Made by a program: the position numbers and the translations under genes
Notes under the pieces: model-generated
What the model was told of the DNA's origin: nothing
What the model saw: only the letters and a program-made list of their open reading frames with translations
Databases searched by the model: none
NCBI RefSeq assembly: GCF_002113885.1
Contig: NW_018408610.1
Location: forward strand, 564,648 to 628,647
Reading direction: 5' to 3'
Length of the DNA: 64,000 nt
Source: Mizuhopecten yessoensis
Lineage: Eukaryota
Shown: positions 20,938 through 37,252 of the stretch, in pieces
Position numbering within the stretch: the first letter of the stretch is position 1
How the letters are laid out: every line of letters begins with the position of its first letter

Positions 20938-22307
20938 TTTTAATAGATATATAACAATTTATATAACATATATTGAATTAATTGCTTACAGGAAACGTAT
21001 ACAAAAAAACAACGTTTTAATGGTACAAAATTAAACACATGAAGATTATACATATTTAACAAGATAAAGGAGTTTGATGTTAGATGAAATTGCACACATG
21101 ATATACAAGATGCTCAATAAAAAAGAAAGGATTTTTTGCTTATTCAATAAAAAAGACTGCACTTATTTAATAAAATATAATTAGATCATGAAGAAATATA
21201 AATGAAAATGGTGCAATTATCCCTGCTAGTATTTAAATCATGAAAGTATTACTGGTCGGATTCACTTCTATATTAACTTTCCAAAATTTATTTTATCAAT
21301 TACTGCCTTGGTTATATGAAAAAATGTCAATCTGTTTATATAATGAACTCATATACAAGTACCACTTGGTTGAAAATGATAATATTACATTCGCATCACC
21401 TAAAACTTCTATCCTTATTGGAAAATAAGCCGGCCCTAACAAGTCTGTGATTCCTTACAGTCAAATTCATCACAAACTTAAAAAAATAGTAGGCCAGTCG
21501 TAAAAAATGTCTTTGAATTTTTTATGTTTGAACCTGCTTAATAGTCTTTGAATTTTGAAAATAAGCCATATACTGCCTATTCGTTAATATCCTTCGAAAG
21601 TCAGACAGCATTGAAAAAAGACAAAAGAAAATATTTCTCACAGGATAATAAGTCGCGCCTTATCCGTAATTCAGGATATATGAACAATACACGATATCGA
21701 TAAATATTGACTTTTTAGCCACGCATATATTAGAAACATATTAATGTTAAGAATGTATAACAATATATCGCTGAACTACCTTACTACTGAATTGAGAATA
21801 CTTGGCTTTTTATAGTTTTAACATCCGTTCAAATATACCAGGTAATCAGTTCCATTAAATCAGCTTATCCAAGCGGCATCTCTTATTCTGGTTCTCCTGT
21901 CCAGCAGGCAAGACATATCCGATTCTACCATTTGAAAGATAGCTAGTAAGCCAGCCGTTCACAGACATTCCATTCTTTGCAGCGCTGCAGTGCCGTTCAC
22001 ATACATTTCATATATTGCAGTGCTGCAGTGGAACTTCCATTGGTAAGGTGACCGATGTCACACACCTGTTGTCCTCGTCTTTAGACCATCGTTTTTATAT
22101 CACAGACAAAATTAATAAGCTTTATCGACAACTAATTAGCTAAATTGCTAACCTGTTAATTATAGTGTGTCTAAAATGTTCACACGCCTGACCACAGAAA
22201 ATCATGAACAAACTTTTCTATGAGAATCCATCAATAATGTCGCAGGTTAATAAATTCGCAAAGCAATGTTATACTGTTAAATACCCGACAAAAGTCATCC
22301 ACACATC

Positions 22308-22329
22308 TTAAACGAATCGTTCCTGGTAC
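22308..22329 (-). CDS. Mucin exon 11 coding part (YQERFV*)
   Basis: tattacag acceptor in phase 2; TAA at 22308-22310. Confidence 0.7.
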
Positions 22330-23396
22330 CTGTAATATAGAGAACAGCAAAATTAGTTTTTATCAAATTTTGAACGAATGATTTTATGCAGAATCGGATT
22401 TAGTGAACAGTTGTTCAATACCATTGCTATTGCTGCTTAACGCTAAATGCTACAACATGCTAAATCTATTTTATCAAGAACGATACACCAGAAGGTATTG
22501 CACTGCATAGTCATTTTTACTGCAATAAACATTTTACAGGTAAGATATATCATTCTTTACCATTATACAGTATATTTACTAAAAATAACAGCACACATAC
22601 CCAAACATGTCGCTGTGTCGTGTTGACAACCTTGGGCGTCGGATATAAAGCTAAGGATTTAAACAAAATCATGACTGAATAATTATTCACATTATTTAAC
22701 AGTTTAAGATACTCATGACATATTTGAGTCTCGCAATCAGAAAACACGCAGTTTATTGAAATTGTGTAATTCAATATACACGAATGTCACAAATGACATT
22801 ACCCAAGGTTGAATAAAGTCACTCATATGTTACAATTTGCTCAATTTAGGTTGGTTGAATTATCATTGTCCATATATATATATATATGTTTATACAGCAA
22901 AACTTAATACGTGTACTCTATTCATTAATTTGCATATAAGGAATTACTTAAATGTTTTAAAATAAGATTTTGTTACGCATATGAAATCATCCTTCCATTG
23001 AAAGTAGTATATGTCATTAAAAACAAATTCAAGAATAGTCCAAGATTCTCAAGGTAAAATACGACTGCATCAGTTATAATCGCGAAGAATAGTTCCAATC
23101 AAGAGTCTTCCTATCTATATAGAAGATGAAGCAACCAAAAGAAGTTTTTCTAGCTGAGAGTAACGTAAATGCAATGTAAATATTTCATATTACACCTGCA
23201 ATTCTGTCAAAGGTATTGCAACATGGGATTTTGTTGAAAGATTTGTTTTGAAAGGTTTAAAACAAATATATCACAATAGTGACAGTAGCACCTTAAAAAG
23301 TCCTAATTCGAAAAACACAGAATATATTAATTTTCTTTGCATGACTCTGAGCATAACATTTGTTTCATATACATGTATCTGTTAATCATATGAAAC

Positions 23397-23427
<31 letters not shown>

Positions 23428-26400
23428 CCAAATTACAACTACACCATCTGATCAACGTGTAGGTAGGTGTATTTCATGTTAGACTGACCTGATTTTCTGT
23501 GTCTAATAATCTGTACGAGTCACCGGGTTCAACGTATTTGGGTCTTCTATGCTCATGTGCCGCTGAAGTGTGGTAGTCACGTGGCGGGTTCGATATTTCT
23601 ATTGGCAAATACATCCGAGACTTTTAAAAAAACAGTAAGAGACCGTTCTTAATTCATTTTACTCTAGTAGATGATGTGTTCTGTCAATTTTAGGTACGTA
23701 TGGTTAAAAATATTCAAAACAATGTTGTGTAATATGATAATTACCTTATAATCGTAAGATTAAGTATGATTTTGAATTAATATTTATCAACTGTCTATCG
23801 TTTTTATTTTATATTTTTTTATTTATAACTTCAGAAAACATTATTATGACAACGAACTTAAACTTTTGTTAAAAAAATGTGCATTACTTTTCAAAATTAT
23901 CAATTGAAACACAAATACAAAGAGTGTTAAACATTTTTTTGTATTTGTATTTTAAAAAACTATTGTGAAATTCCGTCTACAGAAAAAAGAGTACTGTGTC
24001 CTCTGAATCGGACGAAATCGACCGATAACGACAATTTCAGGAGCTGAGGACACTTTGGGGAAAATGAAAAAACAATAATAACTTACAACAGCGAACTTAA
24101 AAAATAATTCAATAATTTAAAATAGGTTATAAAAACACTATTAAAAATAGTGTAAAAGTACGCTATTTGTATTTTAATAAACTATTGTGAAAATCGCAAA
24201 TCTGTTCAGTGAGGTCTTTGACTTTACCGGTACAACTGGTTGGTCGCTGATTCTTTCCCAGCCGTTATAGTAGGCTGCCGGGCGTTCATTTTCGGAACTC
24301 CACACCATGTGTTCCCGTCTTGGTGGTCCCCGGTCCCCGGTCCCAATATTGTACGCCCTATTGGCCCTCAAGTTCTCCATTCTTGTTGGCATACTGATTT
24401 CACTGCCATAATCTCGATTATGTCTGTAGAAAAACGTCAACACGATCAAATATATTCAAGCTTTACCGGGTTATCTCCCCTTTGAGTATCATCAGAGTGT
24501 TTGATAGCAAAACAGTCTTAAAAAATAGCGTTTGAGTAATGAAAATAAATTTTAATGATTCATTTTGTTAATTCATTTCAACAGCAAATTGTATGCATAC
24601 CTTTAAAGAAAAGCTAAAAGAAACGGATTTAATACAAACGAGAATTTATATTTAATTATAGATATATTACACGAATACTTTGAGTATAGGTGCTCATTCG
24701 TTTAATTTCATTTCATTTAATTTCATTTCATTTATAACTACACTCGATAATTTATGATATACACTTTAAAAAAATCAAGGGGTCAGAACATACATTCAAT
24801 GTATAACAATCAGAAGTTTTCACTAACGTTTTTTCTCCGGGTTAATTCTTTTTTTCAGTGCGTACATTACACGTTAACATCATGAACATAGATGCGTACG
24901 GATTACACTATTTTAATTGCATTGATAAGCGTAAAGTTTACTTTCAATTCAAAAATCCATATTTCAAATACAAACGACCACTTTTTACAATCCTGAAAGT
25001 AACAATGTTAATTTACGTTTCAAATTCCTTGACGTCTGTCCGATGGAATACTACTTGCCTTGTACTACTATGGGTTTTCTTTGTTGTCCTTCTTTTCTTG
25101 CATACACATACGATGACGACTACGATGACGATGATAACTGCTCCTCCTAACCCTGCGGTAACTACCAGAATGTTTGTGAGGTCACTAGACTTTAAGCAGC
25201 TATCACTGTAATGCTCGAATACGGTGTCTGGGAGGCATCTGTAATACAAAGTTGAACCATGAAGCGGTACACCATACGCTCGTCACAGATTAGTTTGGCA
25301 GTTGTAATGATTGAAATGTAAAAAATATTTGGTTGGTTGGTTGATTGTATAGGGTTTAATGTTCTATCACCAGCTAATGTCATTCAAGGACGTACTTCCA
25401 TGTGAGTTGTGTGTGTGTGCTGGAGGCAAGGTTCATTGGTGTATTAGCCTCCTTGTGATAGCGCGGATCTGATGCAGACTTTAAAGTGCTATCTCACTGA
25501 GTTACTATGCCGAAGGCACCCAGCACAGAATTTCGTCCGGTCTCACCATACTGACAATGGATGAATCAGTTGTTGCAATAACCCTTAATGCTTAAAGTTA
25601 AGCAGGAAATAACAACTACCATTTTTAAGGAATTTGGTATGACCTAGCCTGGGGACAGAACCCATTACCTTCCTCACCTAGAAGAACGCTCTGCGTTAAA
25701 GCCAAAAGTGAGGTATTGCTAAGTGAGGCGCTAAGAAAAAATTGGAGGTGATTAGTTTAAAGAAGAAAGATATCAACTGTTGGAATTGAAAGAGTGAACT
25801 ACAACATAATTGAATGTATATACCCTTGATTTAATAAAATCACAAGGATAAACACCATACATTACGGCCGGATATAACGAAAGTTTTTATCAAAGTTATG
25901 TGTTTATGGTAATTATTCTTGTGTTTAAGTGAATCGGTTAGTAAACACCCCAGATATAAAGCGGATATCGTAATTCAGGGGACATAACTCGAAAGTCATA
26001 ACGGTCAAATAACAATGAAAATTTAAATTAAAATGTATAGGACTTTAAATTTAAGATTCCTTACTTTGTTTTTTTAGCGATAAATCTTTATGATATTAGC
26101 GATTTCTGCCACTTTATCCACATCACTTGAATGCAAAATACATGGTGATAAAATATCGTATTTAGTATATAAAATATGTATATACATATACAAAGAATTG
26201 ATACAAAATTAAAAACACTTTTTAACGTCAAAATTTGTGGAACAACAAGGATGGAAAAGAAAAAAAAATCATTTAGTTTCAAAGAAAACTGATATTAGTC
26301 TACACAATTATTTTTTTTATAAATAAATGTATTAAATCAAATTAACTTTAATTCATATTAATTTGTTTCTGTCGATATATTGAAAATTAAAAGAAATGTG

Positions 26401-29400
26401 CAATTTGGAAAAAAGTTGTATTGCTAATTGTTTTGAAGAAGAACCTTCTAAAATATTCATCGAAGCCACTGTAGATAAATTCTTGTTAGTGCATTTGAGT
26501 TGTCTTTCTTTGAAAACTAAATACAGTTTAAAAGACAGTTTTCAGTTGCTTATATTTTGTTTCCATTAGTACATTGTATACATGTCTGTGATAGTCATAG
26601 ACATTTTCAACAGTTTTCTGTTGATATGAATACAAAATTGCGGCTACTTCATAAGGGGGCGGAAACCGATGACGCAAGGATACAGATGATTTAAGAAAGG
26701 ACAATAATTTGTGCGATATTTATAAAGGTTATTGTATTCTTTTCAAATGGAAGTAAATGCTCTATATCATTTTATCGCAATGCCATCGTATTATAAGGTC
26801 TTTATGTGTTACTGTTTTGAATTTGTGAGCTTGTGAACTTATTCAACCGACTGTATCAGTCATTAATTCAGTCGATTCGCTGCTTTTTCAGACGTCACAG
26901 GAAACCATAATCAAATTCAATAAAATTACTTTCTGAAACTACCATCAACCTGTGACAGAACAGTTTCTCACGACGTAATGCGACGTCTGCAATTTATAGC
27001 GTTTTTACTAGTTATGCATAGAAGTATACGTTTAATTTCAACATCAATTATTTGTTTGGATTCTTCTTTAAATTCGGCGATTTTGATTAAAAAATCCACA
27101 CCAGACGTACGAAGAAATGAACCATCTTTTTGAAAATTTAGTTTGTAGATGTAGATGCAGAAGCTAAACAGGGTTACATCTCACAGCACAACATGGCCGT
27201 GTCTTTCGTTCAGCACTCAACACTTCATATTTAAACAGAATGAAAAATCCGTGTCTAATGTGTTCCGGTATATATTATGTAAAATACAGCTAAAGGGGAT
27301 AGGTGCCTCGAAAACCCTCTATAACAGTCATGCATGAAGTTCGGCGAGATATACAGTAGCTTTGTCATTGAAATCAACAAGCAGACCGACGTTACTTACA
27401 TGCACCTTGTGTTCCCTGACGGATGAAGTAAGCAAAGTCCGTAGTCACCACATAAATCGTACGTGCATTTCGAATTACAGATGAAAGGGTAATTTGATTT
27501 ATCACCTTCTTTGCAAATTTGGTATTCATTGCAGTTATCTTGTAAATCACAAATCCTTGAGTTTTTCGCTGAAAACAACGAATCAAATGAGTTATAGTGG
27601 ATATTTTTCAATTAATAATTAAATATATATATATATATATAAATGTAAACATGAAACATGCAGTAATGCTGTTGTTAGTAGTCAGTGTTAGTCAATGCAA
27701 TGTTTTCTTTTGTGAAATCAGATATCCTATGCTTCAAAGAGAGAAAACAATAAACTACACTACCATCAATAATTCTTCAAAAATTCAACTCAGATCATCA
27801 CCGAACAACGCTATATCTATATACATAAAATGTTTTACGAAAGTTATGATCAAATATATTTCACTTATGCATTAATGTTATAAAAGATAATACATTATTC
27901 ATTACTGTTCTTACTTACCTTTTTCTAAATCTATCTGCCATTTTGTGTTTGTCTTTGACTGATCAATGCCAACTGTTTTGTAACCAGGCAGGCTCACTTT
28001 CTCTTTTGCCCATTTATTATGTTTGACGGATTGCAGGATTGAGTCTTTCGACTTACCGGCAGCAAATCTAAGTCTATAGTTACATTCGACGCTACCGTTC
28101 CTACAACGTGGAATAATACAGGATGTTGTCGCTTTATTGACATAACTTCATAATAATACAATATATAAATAGCATGTCTGGTACTTTTACGGCAGGTACA
28201 TGAACTCTATTCGCAACTTAATACAAAAATTAACTCAGCATTTGATATAGTGTCATGTAATGGTAACTAAACTGAACCACAAACAAAACCGTCAGAACAT
28301 CGTGGGATCTTACAAAATACAACAATGTGAAAACCGTATTTAATTTATACAAAACATAGTTGTGTTCAAGAATCAGAATAAAGAAAATAAAGTTGTTGTT
28401 GAAATGATTATTTTCACAACATTTCAATTAAAATTGCATTTACCGTCCAAAACTATATACATTAAAACCTCGTTATACTGCCACATTGCAGAGAAATAGT
28501 GTCGATTTAATGGGGCTTTGGGCTGAACTGAGGGAAATGTATAAATATTTTTTAAGAAAATGGGGCATAGCAAGGGGACCTCTAATATGTTTGAAAAAAA
28601 GGTGGAACGAGGGACATTAGATCAGGGATTTTCCTGGTAACATCATCTCGCAATCAGATTAAAATTATGACGCTGACGAAAAGTGTAGGAAGCGATAGGA
28701 AGTAGAAATCTTATTGAGGAGTTAAATACTCACGTAAATCCGATGATAGTCACCCTCTCAAACCCATCTGTGCCATTGTACTTGGTATAAATCTGAAGAA
28801 ACAGAACACATAGAACATATGTTAACACTCAGCACAATCCGAAGGCTAAATTATGTTTAGAACAATCATCTAGAAGACGGAACTTAAATGAAATAATGGG
28901 GGGATGTAAGTAATGTAAGGAAAACAATCTGTAACCAACGTTGTTCGTTTTTAGCCGCGGTCACATATCTTACGGTCACACGTAGTTATAAACGTACTTT
29001 GAACTTCAAGAAACCCATGATTTAGCCGTGGTTAGGCAAAAATTGTTAAACATGTTCAAAATACTATTTCTACGGTGAATTTAGATGCCAGGACCCTACT
29101 GTCACCGTAGTATGAACATAGTTGACCCTATTTGGCCGTAATTGACCCTACTTGACTATAGTGTTTATCGTAGTTGACCGTTGTATCATGGCACTATGGT
29201 TAACACTAGGGTCAAGTAGGGTCAAATAGGGACAACTGCTAGAGTTGGACTACGTTTGAAGTACGTTAATAGTACTGTGACTAGGGTCAAGTGGGGCTAA
29301 ATAGGGTTAAGGGTTGAACTATGTTGAACTACGTCTAACTACGTTTAATACGTTTTACTAAGATCGCCTACGGTCTACAATTTGTACCACAGTCAACTTC

Positions 29401-32400
29401 GGTCATCCCCCACTACGGTCAACTACGTGCGTGACCGTAAGATGTGACCGCGGCATTAGCACGGCGTTCAGAAAACTGCGACATAACTGATCACTCACAT
29501 TCAACCAGGTACATGTTGTAAACATAAGTCAAAGATGGTATATGTGGGATAATGAGACAGATACTGGATAAGAAATGCTAGTCAACAGTCTGTTATTATC
29601 AGGGATAAAGTTATCAAATGAAAAAAAAACTTCGCGAGAACCCCTCTAGAAATTGTACCGACAATGTTGTCTACCAAAATAACTCGTCGCAGACAAAAAT
29701 AGTATAAGAAATACATATAAAAAATAGATACATATAAAACAAAATAAAAATATAAACAATTTCATATTATGTAAATATTATTTGCAGAGCGATATATTAA
29801 AACGGTTTAATAGGAAATTAGTTTCTCCTTTCTCTTCATGCTTTGTCCCTTTGTTCTATTTTCCATTTTCAATTTTTTCTCGTCTACTGAAAAGCCGCAA
29901 GGCCGTTATAGCGGACGTAAAACCATCAAATAATAAATAATAATAAAAGACTTGAAGGTGGTGTAGCTGTAGGTAATCGACCAATGTTGACCGCATTCGT
30001 TTATCGCGGTCCAAACGGTTGAACCGGTTGGGCCGGAGTCGTTCGTTGTTTAATAAGGTCAGACTTAGTAATCTGATGCTGCTTTCAGGCGAGCTCTGAC
30101 AAACCCTTGCAAGGGCTGCATAAACATTTGCAGGTCCGCCAGTGTTTATACCCGAAAACGTTACATTTAAAAACAGACAAACTGGTTGAACAGGATACGC
30201 GAACGGGGCTATGTCACAGACAGTGAGCCAGCGATACCTCCAATAAGTGGAAGCGTAAAAGTATTTGTCAATTTTCTACTTTTTTATATATATATATATA
30301 TTTGTAAGTAGTATATTATAATATATTTAATATACTTCTTCACTCACCATGTTACGGAATGACTCGCTATAAGTTTGATAAAGAGCAGACGATTTGTCCT
30401 TCAAGTCTTCGGGAAACACAATATCAACAACGACCGTCAACTTTACTGCAATGATTATTTGTTCTGAAATATAAAGTAATCAAGAAATAATCAGTTCCTA
30501 TTATTTCATAAATAATTCAATTATGCTCATACCATGTGACCAGTTGAATGAAACTGAAAACCCATTGAATAGGTTGGTCTCTGTTGACTTTGCAATTATA
30601 ATTTGGCACGATTTAAGCTTGCAAAACGACACCATAAATTAAATGTTTATGACAATGGTGTTTTAATACAAATGTACTTCGCGCGATAAAGATAATCTGC
30701 GATTTAAGAGGCAACAATATAGGCAAATCATGTATGTATAATGTAGTGAAAATTGAAAAAATGCTTCTTTCATGGATCAAAACGTCCCTTTGTGATTAAG
30801 TAATCCCCATTTTGGTACACCTCAACTACATTTCTCAGGCGACAACAACTTTTTTCAACTTATATTAAACTCTCTTGTTGGCCTAAAAGTTGGCGTGCGG
30901 GGGTCTTTATGTGGGAGGAAACCGGTGTACCCGGAGAAAACCCACGTGATCAGGCAGGTGACCCCAGCCCTTTACACGTCTGATCGAACCCCGGGCGCCT
31001 TGGTGAAAAGCAAATGAGCCATTCACTGTGTACCCAACCACCAAATTGATTTAGAATACATATTCGCATGATACAAACTATTTATTTCACAGAAGCTACT
31101 TTTGCGTTCAAATTTCATTTTGTTTAAATGAAAACAATCAACAATCTTCCCTGTTTCGTAACCTATCTTTTCGCACATGTGACGTCACGCTATCATAGAT
31201 CTTTCGGAGCGTAATCGATAAGTTTGTACTGGTGAGCTTTGCATTGATCGCATGTATATATCACAATTATTGATAAAATAACATTTTAATTCATTAGAAA
31301 AAAATGTAAAGGAATAACTATCATACTCATATTAAAATATAGGAAAATGGCACTACAATATTTATTTAATTGAGGGCAGTTGAGGTATAAACGTTAACAT
31401 TTCTAACTCTTACCTGCTGAAATAACAGAGCTACCAGGAGTAAGTGTGGTTGGTTTGATAGCAAAAGGCGTAGTTGTAGTAGGTATGGTCGTTGTAAGTG
31501 TCGTTGTTGTAGGTGTGGTTACAGTAGGTGTTGTTGTATTAGGTGCGGTTGTAGTTGGTGTGGTTGTAGTAGGTGTGGTTGTAGTAGGTGTTGTAGTAGT
31601 TGTGGTTATAGTAGGTGTTGTAGTAGGTGTTGTTGTAGTAGGTGTGGTTGTAGTTAGTGTTGTAGTGGGTGTGGTTGTAGTAGGTGTTGTAGTGGGTGTG
31701 GTTGTAGTAGGTTTGGTTGTAGTCGGTGTTGTTGTAGTGGGTGTGGTTGTAGTAGGTATGGTTGTAGTAGGTGTGGTTGCAGTAGGTGTGGTTGTAGTAG
31801 GTTTGGTTGTAGTAGTTGTTGTTGTACTAGGTGTGGTTGTAGCAGGTGTCGTTGTAGTAGGTGTTTTAGTGAATGTGCTTGTACTAGGTGTTGTAGTAGG
31901 TGTGGTTGTAGTAGGTGTTGTTGTAGTAGGTGTTGTTGTAGTAGGTGTTGTTGTAGTAGGTGTGGTTGTAGTAGGTGTTGTTGTAGTAGGTGTGTTTGTA
32001 CTATGTGTTGTAGTAGGTTTTGTTGTAGTCGATGTTGTTGTAGTTGGTGTAAGTGTAGTAGGGGTGGATGTAATAGGTATTATTGTAATCGGAGTAGTTG
32101 TAGTAGGTGTGGTTGTAGTAGGTTTGGTTGTAGTCGGTGTTGTTGAAGTGGGTGTGGTTGTAGTAGGTATGGTTGTAGTAGGTGTGGTTGCAGTAGGTGT
32201 GATTGTAGTAGGTTTGGTTGTAATAGTTGTTGTTGTAGTAGGTGTGGTTGTACTAGGTGTGGTTGTAGTAGTTGTGGTTGTAGCAGGTGTCGTTGTAGTA
32301 GGTGTTTTAGTGAGTGTTGTTGTACTAGGTGTTGTAGTAGGTGTGGTTGTAGTAGGTGTTGTAGTAGGTGTTGTAGTAGGTGTTGTAGTAGGTGTGGTTG

Positions 32401-35400
32401 TAGTAGGTGTGGTTGTAGTAGGTGCGGTTGTACTAGGTGTTGTAGTAGGTGTTGTAGTGGGTGTGGTTGTAGTAGGTGTTGTACTAGGTGTGGTTATAGT
32501 AGGTGTTGTAATAGATGTTGTAGTAGGTGTGGTTGTACTAGGTGTTGTAGTAGGTGTTGTAGTAGGCGTGATTGTAGTAGGTGTGGTTGTAGTAGGTGTT
32601 GTAGTAGGTGTTGTAGTAGGTGTGGTTGTAGTAGGTGTGGTTGTAGTAGGTGCGGTTGTACTAGGTGTTGTAGTAGGTGTTGTAGTAGGTGTGATTGTAG
32701 TAGGTGTGGTTGTAGTAGGTGTTGTAGTAGGTGTGGTTGTAGTAGGTGTGGTTGTACTATGTGTTGTAGTAGGTGTGGTTGTACTAGATGTTGTAGTAGG
32801 TGTGGTTGTACTAGGTGTTGTAGTAGGTTTGGTTGTACTAACTGTTGTTGTAGGTGTGGTTGTACTAGGTGTTGTTGTAGTAGGCGTGGTTGTACTCTGT
32901 GTTGTAGTAGGTGTGGTTGTAGTCGGTGTTTTTGTAGTAGGTGTGGTTGTAGTCGGTATTGTTGGAGTAGGTGTGGTGGTATTAGGTATTGTAGTTGGTG
33001 TGGTTGTAGTAGGTGTTGAAGTAGGTGTGGTTGTAGTAGGTGTTGTTGCCGTAGGTGTTGTAGTAGATATGGTTGAAGTCGGTATTGTTGTAGTAGGTGT
33101 GGTTGTACTAGGAGTTGAAGTAGGTGTTGTAGTAGGTGTGCTTGCAGTCGGTGTGGTTGTAGTAAGTGTGGTTTTAGTCGGTGTTGTTGTAGTAGGTGTG
33201 GGTGTAGTCGGTGTTGTTGTAGTAGGTGTGGTTGTCCTAGGTGTTGTAGTAGGTGTGGTTGTACCAGGTGTTGTTGTAGATGTGGTTGTACTAGGTGTTG
33301 TAGTAGCTGTGGTTGTATAAGGTGTTGTAGTAGGTGTTGTTGTACTAGGTGTTGTAGTAGGTGTTGTAGTAGTAGTTGTAGTGGGTGTGGTTGTAGTAGG
33401 TGTGGTTGTAATAGATGTGGTTGTACTAGGTTTTGTAGTATGTGTTCTAGTCGATGTGGTTGTAGTCGGTGTGGTTGTAGCAGGTGTGGTTTTTGTGGTT
33501 GTAGTAGGTGTTGTTGTTTTAGGTGTTGTTGTAGTCGGTGTGGTTGTAGTAGGTGTGGTTGTAGTAGGTGTGTTTGTAGTAGGTGTTGTAGTAGGTGTGG
33601 TTGTAGTAGATGTGGTTTTAGTCGATGTGGTTTTAGTAAGTATTAATGTAGTCGAAGTTGTTGTAGTAGGTGAGGTTGTAGTAGGTGTGGTTGTAGTAGG
33701 TGTGGTTGTACTAGGTGTGGTTGTAGTAAGTCTGGTTGTACTAGGTGTTGTAGTAGATGTTGTAGTAGGTGTTGTAGTCGGTGTTGTTGTAGTAGGTGTG
33801 GTTGTAGTGGGTGTGGTTGTAGTAGGTGTGGTTGTACTAGGTGTTGTAGTAGGTGTGGTTGTAGTCGATGTGGTTGTAGTAGGTGCTGTAGTTGTGGTTT
33901 TAGTAGGTATGGTTGTAGTCGGTGTGGTTGTAGTTGGTGTGGTTGTAGTCGGTGTGGTTTTAGTCGGTGTGGTTGTAGTATGTGTGGTTGTAGTATGTGT
34001 GGTTGTAGTAGGTGTGGTTGTACTAGGTGTTGTAGTAGGAGTGGTTGTAGTAGGTGTTGTTGTAGGTGTTGTTGTAATCGGTGTGGTTGTAGTGGGTGTG
34101 GTTGTAGTAGGCGTGGTTGTACTAGGTGTTGTAGTAGGTGTGGTTGTAGTCGATGTGGTTGTAGTAGGTGCTGTAGTTGTGGTTTTAGTAGGTATGGTTG
34201 TAGTCGGTGTGGTTGTAGTTGGTGTGGTTGTAGTCGGTGTGGTTGTAGTCGGTGTTGTTGTAGTAGGTGTTGTTGTACTAGGTGTTGTTTTAGGTGTTGT
34301 TGTAGGTGTTGTTGTACTAGGTGTTTTAGTAGGTGTAGTTGTAGGCTGTTTTGTCCTAGTAGGTGTGGTTGTAGTCAATGATGTTGTAGTAGGTGTGGTT
34401 GTAGTAGGTGTTGTAGTAGGTGTGGTTGTAGTAGGTGTGGTTGCAGTAGGTGTGATTGTAGTAGGTTTGGTTGTAGTAGTTGTTGTTGTAGTAGGTGTGG
34501 TTGTACTAGGTGTGGTTGTAGTAGGTGTGGTTGTAGCAGTTGTCGTTGTAGTAGGTGTTTTAGTGAGTGTGGTTGTACTAGGTGTTGTAGTAGGTGTGGT
34601 TGTAGTAGGTGTTGTAGTAGGTGTTGTAGTAGGTGTGGTTGTACTAGGTGTTGTAGTAGGTGTTGTTGTGGGTGTGGTTGTAGTAGGTGTTGTACTAGGT
34701 GTGGTTATAGTAGGTGTTGTAGTAGGTGTTGTAGTAGGTGTGGTTGTACTTGGTGTTGTAGTAGGTGTTGTAGTAGGTGTTGTAGTGGGTGTGGTTGTAG
34801 TAAGTGTGGTTGTAGTAGGTGTGGTTGTAGTAGTTGCGGTAGTACTAGGTGTTGTAGTTGTTGTTGTAGTCGGTGGAGTTGTAGTCGGTGTGGTTGTAGT
34901 CGGTGTTGTTGTACTAGGTGTTGTAGTAGGTGTGGTTGTACTAGGTGTTTTAGTAGGTGTGGTTGTAGTAGGTGTGGTTGTAGTAAGTGTTGTTGTAATA
35001 GGTGTGGTTGTAGTAGGTGTTGTTGTAGTAGGTTTGGTTGTACTATGTGTTGTAGTAGGTGTGGTTGTACTAGGTGTTGTAGTAGGTGTGGTTGTTCTAG
35101 CTGTTGTTGTAGGTGTGGTTGTACTAGGTGTTGTTGTAGTAGGTGTGGTTGTACTCTGTGTTGTAGTAGGTGTGGTTGTAGTCGGTGTTTTTGTAGTAGG
35201 TGTGGTTGTAGTCGGTATTGTTGGAGTAGGTGTGGTGGTATTAGGTATTGTAGTTGGTGTGGTTGTAGTAGGTGTTGAAGTAGGTGTGGTTGTAGTAGGT
35301 GTTGTTGCCGTAGGTGTTGTAGTAGATATGGTTGAAGTCGGTATTGTTGTAGTAGGTGTGGTTGTACTAGGTGTTGAAGTAGGTGTTGTAGTAGGTGTGT

Positions 35401-37252
35401 TTGCAGTCGGTGTGGTTGTAGTAAGTGTGGTTTTATTCGGTGTTGTTGTAGTAGGTGTGGGTGTAGTCGGTGTTGTTGTAGTAGGTGTGGTTGTCCTAGG
35501 TGTTGTAGTAGCTGTGGTTGTATAAGGTGTTGTAGTAGGTGTGGTTGCAGTAGGTGTGATTGTAGTAGGTTTGGGTGTAGTTGTTGTTGTTGTAGTAGGT
35601 GTTGTTGTAGTAGGTGTGGTTGTAGTAGGTGTGGTTGTTTGGTGTAGTTGTGTAGTAGGTGTGGTTGTAGCAGGTGTCGTTGTAGTAGGTGTTTTAGTGA
35701 GTGTGGTTGTACTAGGTGTTGTAGTAGATGTGGTTGTAGTAGGTGTGGTTGCAGTAGGTGTGATTGTAGTAGGTTTGGTGTAGTTGTTGTTGTTGTAGTA
35801 GGTGTTGTTGTACTAGGTGTGGTTGTAGTAGGTGTGGTTGTAGTAGGTGTTGTAGTAGGTGTGGTTGTACTAGGTGTTGTAGTAGGTGTTGTAGTGGGTG
35901 TAGTAGGTGTTGTACTAGGTGTGGTTATAGTAGGTGTTGTAGTAGGTGTTGTAGTAGGTGTGGTTGTACTAGGTGTTGTAGTAGGTGTTGTGGGAGGTTT
36001 TATTGCAGTATGTGCTGTTGTAATTCGTGTAAATGTAGAAGGTTTTATTGTAGTAGGTGTGGTTGTGAGACGTGTGGTTGTAGTAGCCATCTTTTTTGTG
36101 ATTGTCGTTCGTGCTGCAGTCGATTGTGACAGTCCATAGGCTACTGCCAGATATACCGTTATAAGGACTGAAATGACAAAGATATATTTACACTAATGAT
36201 GTTATAGGCAACAAAGTACATTTTTCGATATCTGGAGATTATGTAACTAATTTTTGCTTCGTAGATACACTTTTCTGATGATGTGCCTTTTTATTTGGTA
36301 AATTATTTTCTTTTGGCTTATCAGTTATACAAAAATCACGCTGATGTTGTAGTCATCTAAAAGGGAAGAACCTTTTAATTGGCGTATAATATTCATTATG
36401 CGGTACCAAAAGCGTAAACGGCTTTTTTTTATATTTTGATATTCATGGTAATACAGCGAAATGAATCCCCCTCCGCGAAATTTACCAATTTTGCAGTAAT
36501 AAGAAGCTAGAGTTGGTACAGTTAATTGCCTGTCGTGACTTCATCCACCCTTAATGGTTATTAATTATTAAAATGCATACAAAGATTATATAAGAGATAC
36601 TAGGTTTATATTTCATTATTGTTCCGTTCGATCAAAGCTGTAACTGTTGAGGATGTGATCCTGGTGATTCTAAGAGATTTAAGTCGCCTGCATGGTCACC
36701 ATTTTAATGTTATATTGGAGAAAACAAATTACAGTGCATGTTTAAGGTAACCGTAGTTTACTTTCACAGTCGACTGCAGAACACAAAAAAAATGTACTTC
36801 AATGTGTTAGTACCGTGGATATTTTACTATCATATCAAAGTAATCGTGGTAAAACGTAAATTCATTTCGTCCAGTAGAAATTTAGCAGTCTAAAAACAGT
36901 GAGATATCATGATTGAATAACACCAATTCAATACATGATACTAGATATATATAGTAACCAGTTAGTCACAAATTACATATTTGGTTATAATGTTGTACAC
37001 ATTCAATAACATTGCTGGTTACCTGTGTGTGAAATACTTTTTTAACTACATTATACATGAAATAGCAGCAAATAAAACCCTTTATTTATTGTCGGAAAGG
37101 CTTTACCTGGGGATAAATTGGGGGAAATCTCTAAGAGAAAGGTTCGCGAGAGGATCGATTATATTTGCTAAATGTCGGGCGTTCAAACATTGGTGTGATT
37201 TATCTGTTTACGTCCGAGAGAGGTGTGTTTTGTACTTACGGTGGAATCGCAT
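22308..37252 (-). CDS. Transmembrane mucin, MUC3/12/17-like architecture (SP-PTS-SEA-EGF-TM-tail), 11 coding exons
   Basis: Exons 37240-37252, 31414-36167, 30348-30463, 28734-28792, 27919-28100, 27400-27568, 25017-25238, 24228-24423, 23489-23620, 22601-22650, 22308-22329. All introns GT-AG with matching phases; one 1-bp deletion at ~35778. Confidence 0.9.
22601..22650 (-). CDS. Mucin exon 10: cytoplasmic tail
   Basis: ccttag|LYIRRPRLSTRHSDMFG|gtatgt; phase 0 to 2. Confidence 0.7.
23489..23620 (-). CDS. Mucin exon 9: cytoplasmic tail
   Basis: SRMYLP...DSYRLLDTENQ; 132 bp, phase 0 to 0; CAG|gtcagt donor, weaker AAG acceptor. Confidence 0.75.
24228..24423 (-). CDS. Mucin exon 8: cytoplasmic tail
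   Basis: ttctacag / gtaaag; HNRDYGSE...AAYYNGW...VVP; phase 2 to 0. Confidence 0.8.
25017..25238 (-). CDS. Mucin exon 7: end of EGF, TM helix and basic juxtamembrane segment
   Basis: CLPDTVFEHYSDSC..ILVVTAGLGGAVIIVIVVVIVCVCKKRR. Donor is either GT at 25016 or GC at 25058 (same phase). Confidence 0.88.
25331..25760 (-). mobile_element. tRNA-derived SINE with Meta-type core (mucin intron 6)
   Basis: Minus strand: B-box-like gggttctgtccc, then gtcataccaaa..aaaaatggtagttg..agcattaagg (Meta-domain-like), ending in a (CAAC)n tail. Confidence 0.65.
27400..27568 (-). CDS. Mucin exon 6: Cys-rich / EGF-like
   Basis: ICDLQDNCNEYQIC..FICNSKCTYDLCGDYGLCLLHPSGNTRC; tttcag / gtaagt; phase 1 to 2. Confidence 0.9.
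27919..28100 (-). CDS. Mucin exon 5: SEA C-terminal part with G-S-V motif
   Basis: NGSVECNYRLRF...IDLEK; ttgtag / gtaagt; phase 2 to 1. Confidence 0.88.
28734..28792 (-). CDS. Mucin exon 4: SEA middle (59 bp)
   Basis: IYTKYNGTDGFERVTIIGFT; cttcag / gtgagt; phase 0 to 2. Confidence 0.88.
28954..29454. mobile_element. PIF/Harbinger-like MITE, 501 bp (mucin intron 3)
   Basis: ~34-bp TIRs GCCGCGGTCACA(TA)TCTTACGGTCAC..CGTAGTT with TTA-like flanks; internal ttgacccta / tagggtcaa subrepeats. Confidence 0.8.
30348..30463 (-). CDS. Mucin exon 3: SEA domain N-terminal part
   Basis: EQIIIAVKLTVVVDIVFPEDLKDKSSALYQTYSESFRNM; tttcag / gtgagt; phase 1 to 0. Confidence 0.88.
30886..31042 (-). mobile_element. 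Truncated V-SINE (mucin intron 2)
   Basis: V-domain signature GTGGGTTTTCTCCGGGTACACCGGTTTCCTCCCAC preceded by B-box GGTTCGATC on the minus strand. Confidence 0.75.
31414..36167 (-). CDS. Mucin exon 2: rest of signal peptide plus Thr/Pro-rich PTS domain (~1,580 aa)
   Basis: Acceptor tttgtcatttcag, donor G|gtaaga; (TTTP/TTTTP/STTTP)n; frameshift at ~35778. Confidence 0.9.
37240..37252 (-). CDS. Mucin coding exon 1 (MRFH, start of signal peptide)
   Basis: aaacATG CGA TTC CAC C|GTAAGT joins exon 2 to give MRFHLLITVYLAVAYG-LSQST. Confidence 0.75.

What the first reader, a model, noticed from the sequence alone, without database searches (positions are those of the whole stretch)
27919..30463. 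SEA intron positions and cleavage motif appear to match human MUC1
Seen: ..ESFRNM|(phase 0) 59-bp exon IYTKY..GFERVTIIGFT|(phase 2) NGSVEC. Recalled, needs checking: MUC1 has ..DISEM|(0) 56-bp exon FLQIY..GFLGLSNIKFR|(2) PGSVVV. Shared intron phases would imply the module is older than the protostome/deuterostome split. G-S-V is the SEA autoproteolysis site, but here it is GSVEC rather than GSVVV, so cleavage is uncertain.
Basis: partly seen in the sequence, partly recalled or inferred. Interest (0 to 1): 0.7.

Follow-up and report, generated by a model that had tools for sequence, protein, structure and literature searches.

The report
Scallop mucin SEA domain, three exons
Three exons of a scallop membrane-mucin gene encode a genuine SEA self-cleavage domain, but their intron layout is shared by most other SEA domains in the same genome, so it marks an old SEA module and not a special tie to human MUC1.

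Summary
**Observation: confirmed.** On the minus strand, exons 30463-30348, 28792-28734 (59 bp) and 28100-27919 have canonical splice sites and phases 1/0/2/1. Joined, they read ..ESFRNM|IYTKY..IIGFT|NGSVEC. The genome is Mizuhopecten yessoensis. NCBI's truncated model, two paralogues and the Argopecten orthologue keep the same layout.

**It is an SEA domain.**
- The Argopecten orthologue scores 27.5 bits against Pfam SEA (cut-off 26.4).
- Its predicted fold has SEA domains as its five best PDB matches (Z 8.2-9.9; the next match is 6.8).

**The MUC1 link is only partly checked.** Papers say only that the exon 3/4 junction lies just upstream of the cleavage site. Exact human boundaries and phases could not be fetched.

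**The layout is not MUC1-specific.**
- In 10 of 11 other SEA types in this genome, the first exon ends in phase 0 at the same Pfam position.
- Eight other types, and the window's own family, have the phase-2 intron three residues before the Ser.

The pattern therefore belongs to the SEA module. That the module predates the protostome/deuterostome split was already accepted.

**Cleavage is likely but untested.** Spacing around G-S matches the cleaved ADGRF1 and MUC1 domains, and G-[S/C]-V-E-C-N-Y is invariant across the family.

The same scan separately noted this gene as a hidden mucin (s1-517164).

The parts
31414..35812 (-). Large Thr/Pro mucin (PTS) exon. The reading frame is open for 1466 codons and ends GCA G|gtaaga in phase 1. 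T/P-rich sequence continues upstream to about 36090 in another frame.
   Evidence: 67% Thr and 18% Pro. The donor phase fits the phase-1 acceptor of exon A. The splice itself is inferred and not shown by reads.
30348..30463 (-). SEA exon A (strand 1 and helix 1), 116 bp. It starts in phase 1 and ends ..ESFRNM in phase 0.
   Evidence: Pfam SEA E 0.031, profile positions 9-36. Conserved in the paralogues and in Argopecten.
28734..28792 (-). SEA exon B (strand 2), 59 bp, phase 0 to phase 2, reading IYTKY..IIGF plus two bases of a Thr codon.
   Evidence: Present in NCBI model P0004.
27919..28100 (-). SEA exon C (strand 3, helix 2, strand 4), 182 bp. It begins with the last base of the Thr codon followed by N-G-S-V-E-C, and ends in phase 1. 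The putative scissile bond is Gly|Ser at 28096-28091.
   Evidence: In the orthologue model the Gly-Ser sits in the strand 2/strand 3 hairpin.
27400..27568 (-). Cys-rich EGF-like exon, phase 1 to phase 2. Together with the start of the next exon it carries 10 Cys, the last six in an EGF spacing.
25059..25238 (-). End of the EGF-like repeat, transmembrane helix and basic stop-transfer. NCBI's model leaves this exon through a GC donor.
22597..24425 (-). Three cytoplasmic-tail exons (about 24425-24228, 23620-23486, 22650-22597). They are strongly conserved among scallops and contain several Tyr residues.
   Evidence: tblastn of P0004 on the window.

Best explanation
**What it is.** The region encodes the SEA domain of a scallop (Mizuhopecten yessoensis) type-I membrane mucin. 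The order of parts is a roughly 1,500-residue Thr/Pro stalk, the SEA domain, EGF-like repeats, a transmembrane helix and a conserved tail.

**Gene structure.** The SEA domain is built from three exons with intron phases 1-0-2-1. This is the standard gene structure of SEA modules in this genome. Phase-1 borders suit exon shuffling. One phase-0 intron falls after helix 1. One phase-2 intron falls three residues before the nucleophile. The agreement with human MUC1 is therefore best read as inheritance from an old SEA module that was shuffled into many genes. It is not evidence that this gene descends from a MUC1-like ancestor.

**How it probably works (inferred, not shown).** During folding, strain in the strand 2/strand 3 hairpin lets the Ser of G-S-V-E-C attack the Gly carbonyl. 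The chain breaks but the two halves stay joined by the shared sheet. Force on the mucin stalk can then shed it without tearing the membrane.
For: **SEA identity**
- Exon A alone hits Pfam SEA.
- Orthologue P0005:1-115 scores 27.5 bits against a cut-off of 26.4.
- By sequence it hits the solved ADGRF1 SEA domain (E 0.0028) and the MUC1 SEA domain (E 0.13-0.2).
- The AlphaFold model (pLDDT 78) has the strand-helix-strand-strand-helix-strand order.
- Its five best structural matches are all SEA domains, Z 8.2-9.9, followed by a drop to 6.8.
- All 10 nearest Atlas structures are SEA proteins.

**Generic layout**
- Fifteen exon hits of PF01390 in the genome fall into 11 sequence types.
- In 10 of the 11 types the exon starts in phase 1 and ends in phase 0 exactly after profile position 36, as in the window. 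The eleventh type has exons A and B fused.
- The phase-2 intron, followed by one residue and then G-S, is present in eight of those types and in the window family. Middle exons are 59, 68 or 74 bp.

**Cleavage**
- There are no gaps against the cleaved ADGRF1 domain across ..F-x-N-G-S-[VI]-x-x...
- The solved ADGRF1 and MUC1 chains end at that Gly.
- G-[S/C]-V-E-C-N-Y is invariant in four family members, although exon C is otherwise only 57-62% identical between paralogues.
Against: - The window gene's own joined SEA sequence was never scored. Only exon pieces and the orthologue were scored, and exon C alone hits nothing in Pfam or the PDB.
- Splicing of the mucin exon to exon A is inferred from phase and open frame only. 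NCBI's model omits it.
- The human boundaries are unverified.
- The exon B and C partners in the other loci were found by my own rule-based script, not from transcripts.
- Glu and Cys replace the usual Val-Val after G-S-V, so cleavage could be slow or absent.
Confidence: 0.72

Rival explanations
1. The gene is a true orthologue, or close kin, of vertebrate SEA membrane mucins (MUC1, or the MUC3/12/13/17 group). On this reading the shared introns reflect descent from a bilaterian membrane mucin.
For: - The order of parts, mucin stalk then SEA then EGF then membrane anchor, resembles MUC3/12/13/17 and IMPG2.
- NCBI names the product IMPG2-like.
- The intron positions align with those recalled for MUC1.
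Against: - The same introns occur in at least nine unrelated SEA types of this genome, so they carry no gene-level signal.
- The best sequence match is ADGRF1, not a mucin.
- No relatives were found outside scallops in 1.8 billion representatives or in the word search.
- The tail has no known family.
- MUC1 has no EGF repeat, and its first SEA part is recalled to be continuous with the repeat exon, whereas here an intron separates them.
Confidence: 0.12
2. The SEA domain is real but does not self-cleave. It would serve only as a folded spacer between stalk and membrane, as most MUC16 SEA domains do.
For: - G-S-V-E-C departs from G-S-[VI]-V-V.
- A charged Glu and a lone Cys follow the site.
- No biochemical or read evidence is available here.
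Against: - Gly and a nucleophile (Ser, or Cys in one paralogue) are kept in every family member, and the hairpin length equals that of cleaved domains.
- By strand alternation the Glu side chain should face solvent.
- From my own recall of Levitin et al. 2005, which was not checked here, Cys or Thr can replace the Ser in MUC1.
- PMC10556640 stresses that hairpin strain drives the reaction, more than the exact residues.
Confidence: 0.3
3. The agreement of intron positions with MUC1 is a coincidence or a parallel intron gain.
For: - The human positions are not verified here.
- The domains are only about 20% identical, so alignments could slip by a residue.
Against: - Position and phase recur in many divergent SEA modules within one genome.
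- The predicted exon size difference of 3 bp matches the single alignment gap.
- Reviews place the MUC1 exon 3/4 junction next to the cleavage site (PMC11533421).
Confidence: 0.05

Closest known systems
SEA domain (Pfam PF01390), autoproteolytic type, as in MUC1, MUC3/12/13/17, ADGRF1, IMPG2 and matriptase
   Same: - Same fold.
- Same position between an O-glycosylated stalk and the membrane.
- Gly-Ser sits in the strand 2/strand 3 hairpin, with the same spacing as in cleaved domains.
   Different: - The motif is G-S-V-E-C, and G-C-V-E-C in one paralogue.
- Sequence is very divergent: exon C alone matches nothing, and the family is seen only in scallops.
Human MUC1
   Same: - A mucin stalk followed by an SEA domain and a single membrane anchor.
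- The scallop introns align to the recalled MUC1 exon 2/3 and 3/4 junctions.
   Different: - MUC1 has no EGF repeats.
- MUC1 is reported as restricted to mammals.
- Its tail is unrelated.
- From recall, there is no intron between its repeat exon and the start of its SEA domain.
MUC3/12/17, MUC13 and IMPG2 (SEA followed by EGF and a membrane anchor)
   Same: The order SEA, EGF-like repeat, transmembrane helix, short tail is the same. In the mucins a giant single PTS exon lies upstream.
   Different: - There is no EGF repeat before the SEA domain.
- The tail is unrelated.
- No detectable sequence kinship beyond the domain folds.

Membership tests
SEA domain (PF01390) | Match to the family profile above the curated cut-off | tested here: met
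   Argopecten orthologue P0005:1-115 scores 27.5 bits against 26.4, E 3.6e-6. For the window itself only pieces were scored: exon A 14.8 bits, exon C nothing. The joined window model was not searched.
SEA domain (PF01390) | Alpha/beta sandwich with the order strand-helix-strand-strand-helix-strand | tested here: met
   Orthologue model with pLDDT 78. The five best PDB matches are all SEA domains, Z 8.2-9.9. All 10 nearest Atlas structures are SEA proteins.
Autoproteolytic SEA subgroup | Gly followed by a Ser/Thr/Cys nucleophile in a short, strained strand 2/strand 3 hairpin (consensus G-S-[VI]-V-V) | tested here: inconclusive
   G-S is present and conserved, and the spacing is identical to cleaved ADGRF1 and MUC1. 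Positions +3 and +4 are Glu-Cys.
Autoproteolytic SEA subgroup | The chain is actually cleaved and the halves stay associated | not testable with these tools
   This needs protein expression with a Ser-to-Ala control.
MUC1 | SEA domain directly followed by the membrane anchor with no EGF repeat, plus the MUC1 cytoplasmic tail | tested here: not met
   Ten Cys in an EGF-like arrangement lie between the SEA domain and the helix. The tail matches no family. It was not compared directly with the MUC1 tail.
MUC1 | Introns at ..SEM|FLQ.. (phase 0) and in the Arg codon before P-G-S (phase 2) | tested here: inconclusive
   The scallop side and the alignment were tested. The human side rests on reviews (PMC11533421, PMC12958477) and on recall.
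SEA-type membrane mucins (MUC3/12/13/17-like architecture) | Large PTS exon, SEA domain, EGF repeat, transmembrane helix, cytoplasmic tail | tested here: met
   All parts are present in order and are phase-compatible. A signal peptide was not established. This is an architectural resemblance and does not show kinship.

The most novel reading that the evidence does not exclude
The 1-0-2-1 three-exon layout, with the phase-2 intron fixed three residues before the nucleophile, may be the ancestral structure of all animal SEA modules. If so, it could serve as a sequence-independent marker to recognise very divergent SEA domains. Because the middle exon (59, 68 or 74 bp) is never a multiple of three, skipping it would switch a membrane-anchored mucin to a truncated secreted form. 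One paralogue may be a natural Cys-nucleophile SEA domain.
Probability: 0.3. Interest if true: 0.5.

Novelty: new member of a known kind. Interest (0 to 1): 0.3.

Why it matters
- **A possible marker for divergent SEA domains.** SEA domains evolve so fast that sequence searches lose them. Here the last two-thirds of the domain matched nothing. A conserved intron pattern could give an independent handle on homology.
- **A point against a vertebrate-only origin.** From my recall of Lang et al. 2007, which was not read here, membrane mucins arose in vertebrates. This scallop family shows the stalk-SEA-EGF-anchor design outside vertebrates, whether by descent or by reshuffling of the same modules.
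- **An annotation gap.** NCBI's model starts inside the SEA domain and misses the whole mucin stalk.

The point that the module predates the protostome/deuterostome split is not new.

Tried and rejected
**Searches for relatives**
- Exon C and exon A searched alone against the PDB gave nothing useful.
- The exhaustive representative search with exon C found only a paralogue and one unrelated repetitive protein.
- The word search with the orthologue's SEA part found only itself.
- For these reasons no route to deuterostome gene loci existed. The look-up of encoding contigs accepts only proteins returned by these searches.

**Literature**
- Nine paper searches and many look-ups were made for exon boundaries of MUC1, MUC16 and other SEA genes.
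- They gave only coarse statements. Bork and Patthy 1995 and Pei and Grishin 2017 are not held.

**Reads**
One local script used window 21001-31000 as a private BLAST target.

**Other**
- A MAFFT alignment mixing exon A and exon C fragments misaligned them (A3). It was not used for a profile search.
- The joined spliced SEA model has no reference, so it was sent to no search or fold tool. It was only assembled inside scripts.
- No human contig was fetched.
Full report
**1. Observation**

The gene lies on the minus strand. Reading the sequence and translating it gave three exons:

| Exon | Window coordinates | Length | Boundaries |
|---|---|---|---|
| A | 30463-30348 | 116 bp | acceptor tttcag, two bases completing a codon, ends ..ESFRNM then gtgagt, phase 0 |
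| B | 28792-28734 | 59 bp | cttcag, IYTKY..IIGF plus AC, then gtgagt, phase 2 |
| C | 28100-27919 | 182 bp | ttgtag, G completing a Thr codon, then N-G-S-V-E-C.., ends ..DLEK plus G, then gtaagt, phase 1 |

The sum is 357 bp, or 119 codons, with phase-1 borders on both sides.

**2. Whose gene, and is the model real**

- Names returned with the homologues identify the genome as Mizuhopecten yessoensis. The assembly size fits.
- NCBI's own product for this gene, P0004 (330 aa, called IMPG2-like), starts at the Met that closes exon A. It then follows exactly my exons B and C, the EGF-like exon, the transmembrane exon and three tail exons.
- Upstream, a Thr/Pro reading frame stays open for 1466 codons (35812-31414; 67% Thr, 18% Pro). 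It ends GCA G|gtaaga in phase 1, which fits the phase-1 acceptor of exon A. This splice is inferred.
- Two paralogues exist. One lies about 50 kb away on the same contig and one on contig C2813.
- The Argopecten irradians orthologue was fetched with its locus. All these copies keep the 116/59/~180 bp exons and phases, and Argopecten also has Thr-rich repeats upstream.
- No relatives outside scallops were found.

**3. Is it an SEA domain**

- By pieces the evidence is thin. Exon A gives Pfam SEA at E 0.031, and exon C gives nothing.
- The joined window model has no reference, so I did not send it to any search or fold tool.
- I used the Argopecten protein P0005 instead. Its annotation starts inside exon A, so residues 1-115 cover nearly the whole domain.
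- That stretch scores 27.5 bits on Pfam SEA (cut-off 26.4).
- By sequence it hits the solved SEA domains of ADGRF1 (E 0.0028) and MUC1 (E 0.13-0.2).
- An AlphaFold model (pLDDT 78, pTM 0.69) shows strand-helix-strand-strand-helix-strand, with Gly53-Ser54 in the hairpin between strands 2 and 3.
- An exhaustive structural comparison puts five SEA domains on top: mouse Muc16 at Z 9.9, TMPRSS6 at 9.5, human MUC16 at 9.2, a mouse membrane protease at 8.5, and another MUC16 entry at 8.2. The next match is at 6.8.
- Foldseek's first hit is also MUC16 SEA.
- The ten nearest Atlas structures are all SEA proteins.

The domain assignment is secure for the family, and by 35-45% identity for the window gene.

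**4. The comparison with MUC1**

- The HMMER alignment to the solved MUC1 chain lines up scallop ..KKM|IRTQY with MUC1 ..SEM|FLQIY, and scallop ..LNFT with MUC1 ..IKFR.
- The alignment has one single-residue gap inside the exon-B span. A 59-bp scallop exon thus predicts a 56-bp human one, as recalled.
- I could not fetch any vertebrate gene structure. The genome collections are prokaryotic, and the contig look-up accepts only proteins returned by searches that found nothing outside scallops.
- Papers gave coarse support only. MUC1-N is encoded by exons 1-4 and MUC1-C by exons 4-7 (PMC11533421). Exon 3 is said to encode the SEA cleavage region and exons 4-7 the C-terminal subunit (PMC12958477). 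These statements put the exon 3/4 junction just upstream of G|S.
- Each 156-residue MUC16 repeat is encoded by five exons, with Met24, Cys59 and Cys79 (PMC3431878).
- From my own memory, unchecked: O'Brien's exon limits (1-42, 43-65, 66-123) would put the MUC16 introns at the same two places, and the MUC1 secreted isoform diverges exactly after ..SEM. These are leads, not tests.

**5. The decisive local test**

I asked whether the pattern is special to this mucin. A six-frame search of the scallop genome with Pfam SEA gave 15 exon hits in 11 sequence types. I fetched all of them.

- **First intron.** In 10 of the 11 types the exon begins in phase 1 and ends with a canonical donor in phase 0, exactly after profile position 36. 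This is the position of the window's Met.
- **The exception.** The eleventh type (L020) has exons A and B fused. It ends ..IIKF plus two bases in phase 2.
- **Second intron.** Downstream I found, with good splice signals, a short phase 0-to-2 exon followed by an exon that starts with one base, one residue and then G-S-[VIL].
- **Middle-exon lengths.**

| Length | Loci |
|---|---|
| 59 bp | L012, L014 |
| 68 bp | L007, L013, L018, L019 |
| 74 bp | L017 |
| fused with exon A | L020 |

- **Third exon.** It ends in phase 1 in most cases.

The 1-0-2-1 layout, with the phase-2 intron three residues before the nucleophile, is thus the general structure of SEA modules in this genome. It says that the module is old and was spread by exon shuffling. 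It says nothing specific about kinship with MUC1.

The gene also has ten Cys in an EGF-like arrangement between the SEA domain and the membrane. MUC1 lacks these, and the best sequence match is ADGRF1. In architecture the gene is nearer MUC3/12/13/17 or IMPG2.

**6. Cleavage**

- The alignment to ADGRF1 runs without gaps through ..F-T-Q-G-S-V-E-C.. against ..F-R-N-G-S-I-V-A...
- The solved ADGRF1 and MUC1 chains stop at that Gly, which is the mark of cleavage.
- Hairpin length is therefore as in cleaved domains. Hairpin length matters because strain drives the reaction (PMC10556640).
- G-[S/C]-V-E-C-N-Y is invariant in the three Mizuhopecten genes and in Argopecten. The rest of exon C is 57-62% identical between paralogues and less to Argopecten.
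- One paralogue has Cys for Ser. Cys is also a competent nucleophile, from my recall of Levitin et al. 2005.
- By strand alternation the Glu should face solvent and the Cys the core.
- I put self-cleavage at about 0.65-0.7. It remains untested.

**7. Verdict**

The match to MUC1 is plausible, but the human side is unverified. The match is generic to SEA modules, and the evolutionary conclusion was already accepted.
- This is a new, badly annotated member of a known kind.

One local script used window 21001-31000 as a private BLAST target.
- No human contig was fetched.
- The joined spliced model was left out of all search and fold tools.

Noticed in passing
L005:6822-6830 (G000:C2813, paralogue P0003): This paralogue reads G-C-V-E-C where the others read G-S-V-E-C. 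It may be a natural Cys nucleophile in an SEA domain. It is seen in one assembly only and could be a sequencing error.
   Followed up: partly
window 28944-29452: A foldback, MITE-like element of about 500 bp sits in the intron between exons A and B. It has terminal inverted repeats of about 33 nt (gccgcggtcaca..cgtagt) and internal inverted repeats.
   Followed up: partly
window 25057-25058: NCBI's model leaves the transmembrane exon through a GC donor (AG|gcaagt), not a GT donor.
   Followed up: no
window 35790-36090: The Thr/Pro frame breaks near 35812 and continues upstream in another frame. This is either an indel in the assembly of the repeats or a real interruption. No clear signal-peptide exon was found between 35950 and 37700; the only candidate is a weak one at 36616.
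   Followed up: partly
window 22597-30463 (P0004) and L006 (P0005): The NCBI models of this gene family in Mizuhopecten and Argopecten start inside the SEA domain and omit the whole mucin exon. The family is therefore annotated as short IMPG2-like proteins.
   Followed up: yes
A3 alignment: MAFFT aligned the exon C fragments (strand 3, helix 2, strand 4) onto the exon A fragments (strand 1, helix 1). This hints at the internal two-fold pseudo-symmetry of the SEA fold.
   Followed up: no
L007, L008, L009 (contigs C5460, C2344) and L010, L011 (C5507): A family of near-identical SEA first exons (FNTQFHLQNTTW..) occurs in at least five copies. This is a recently expanded SEA gene family with the motif G-S-V-N-V.
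   Followed up: partly
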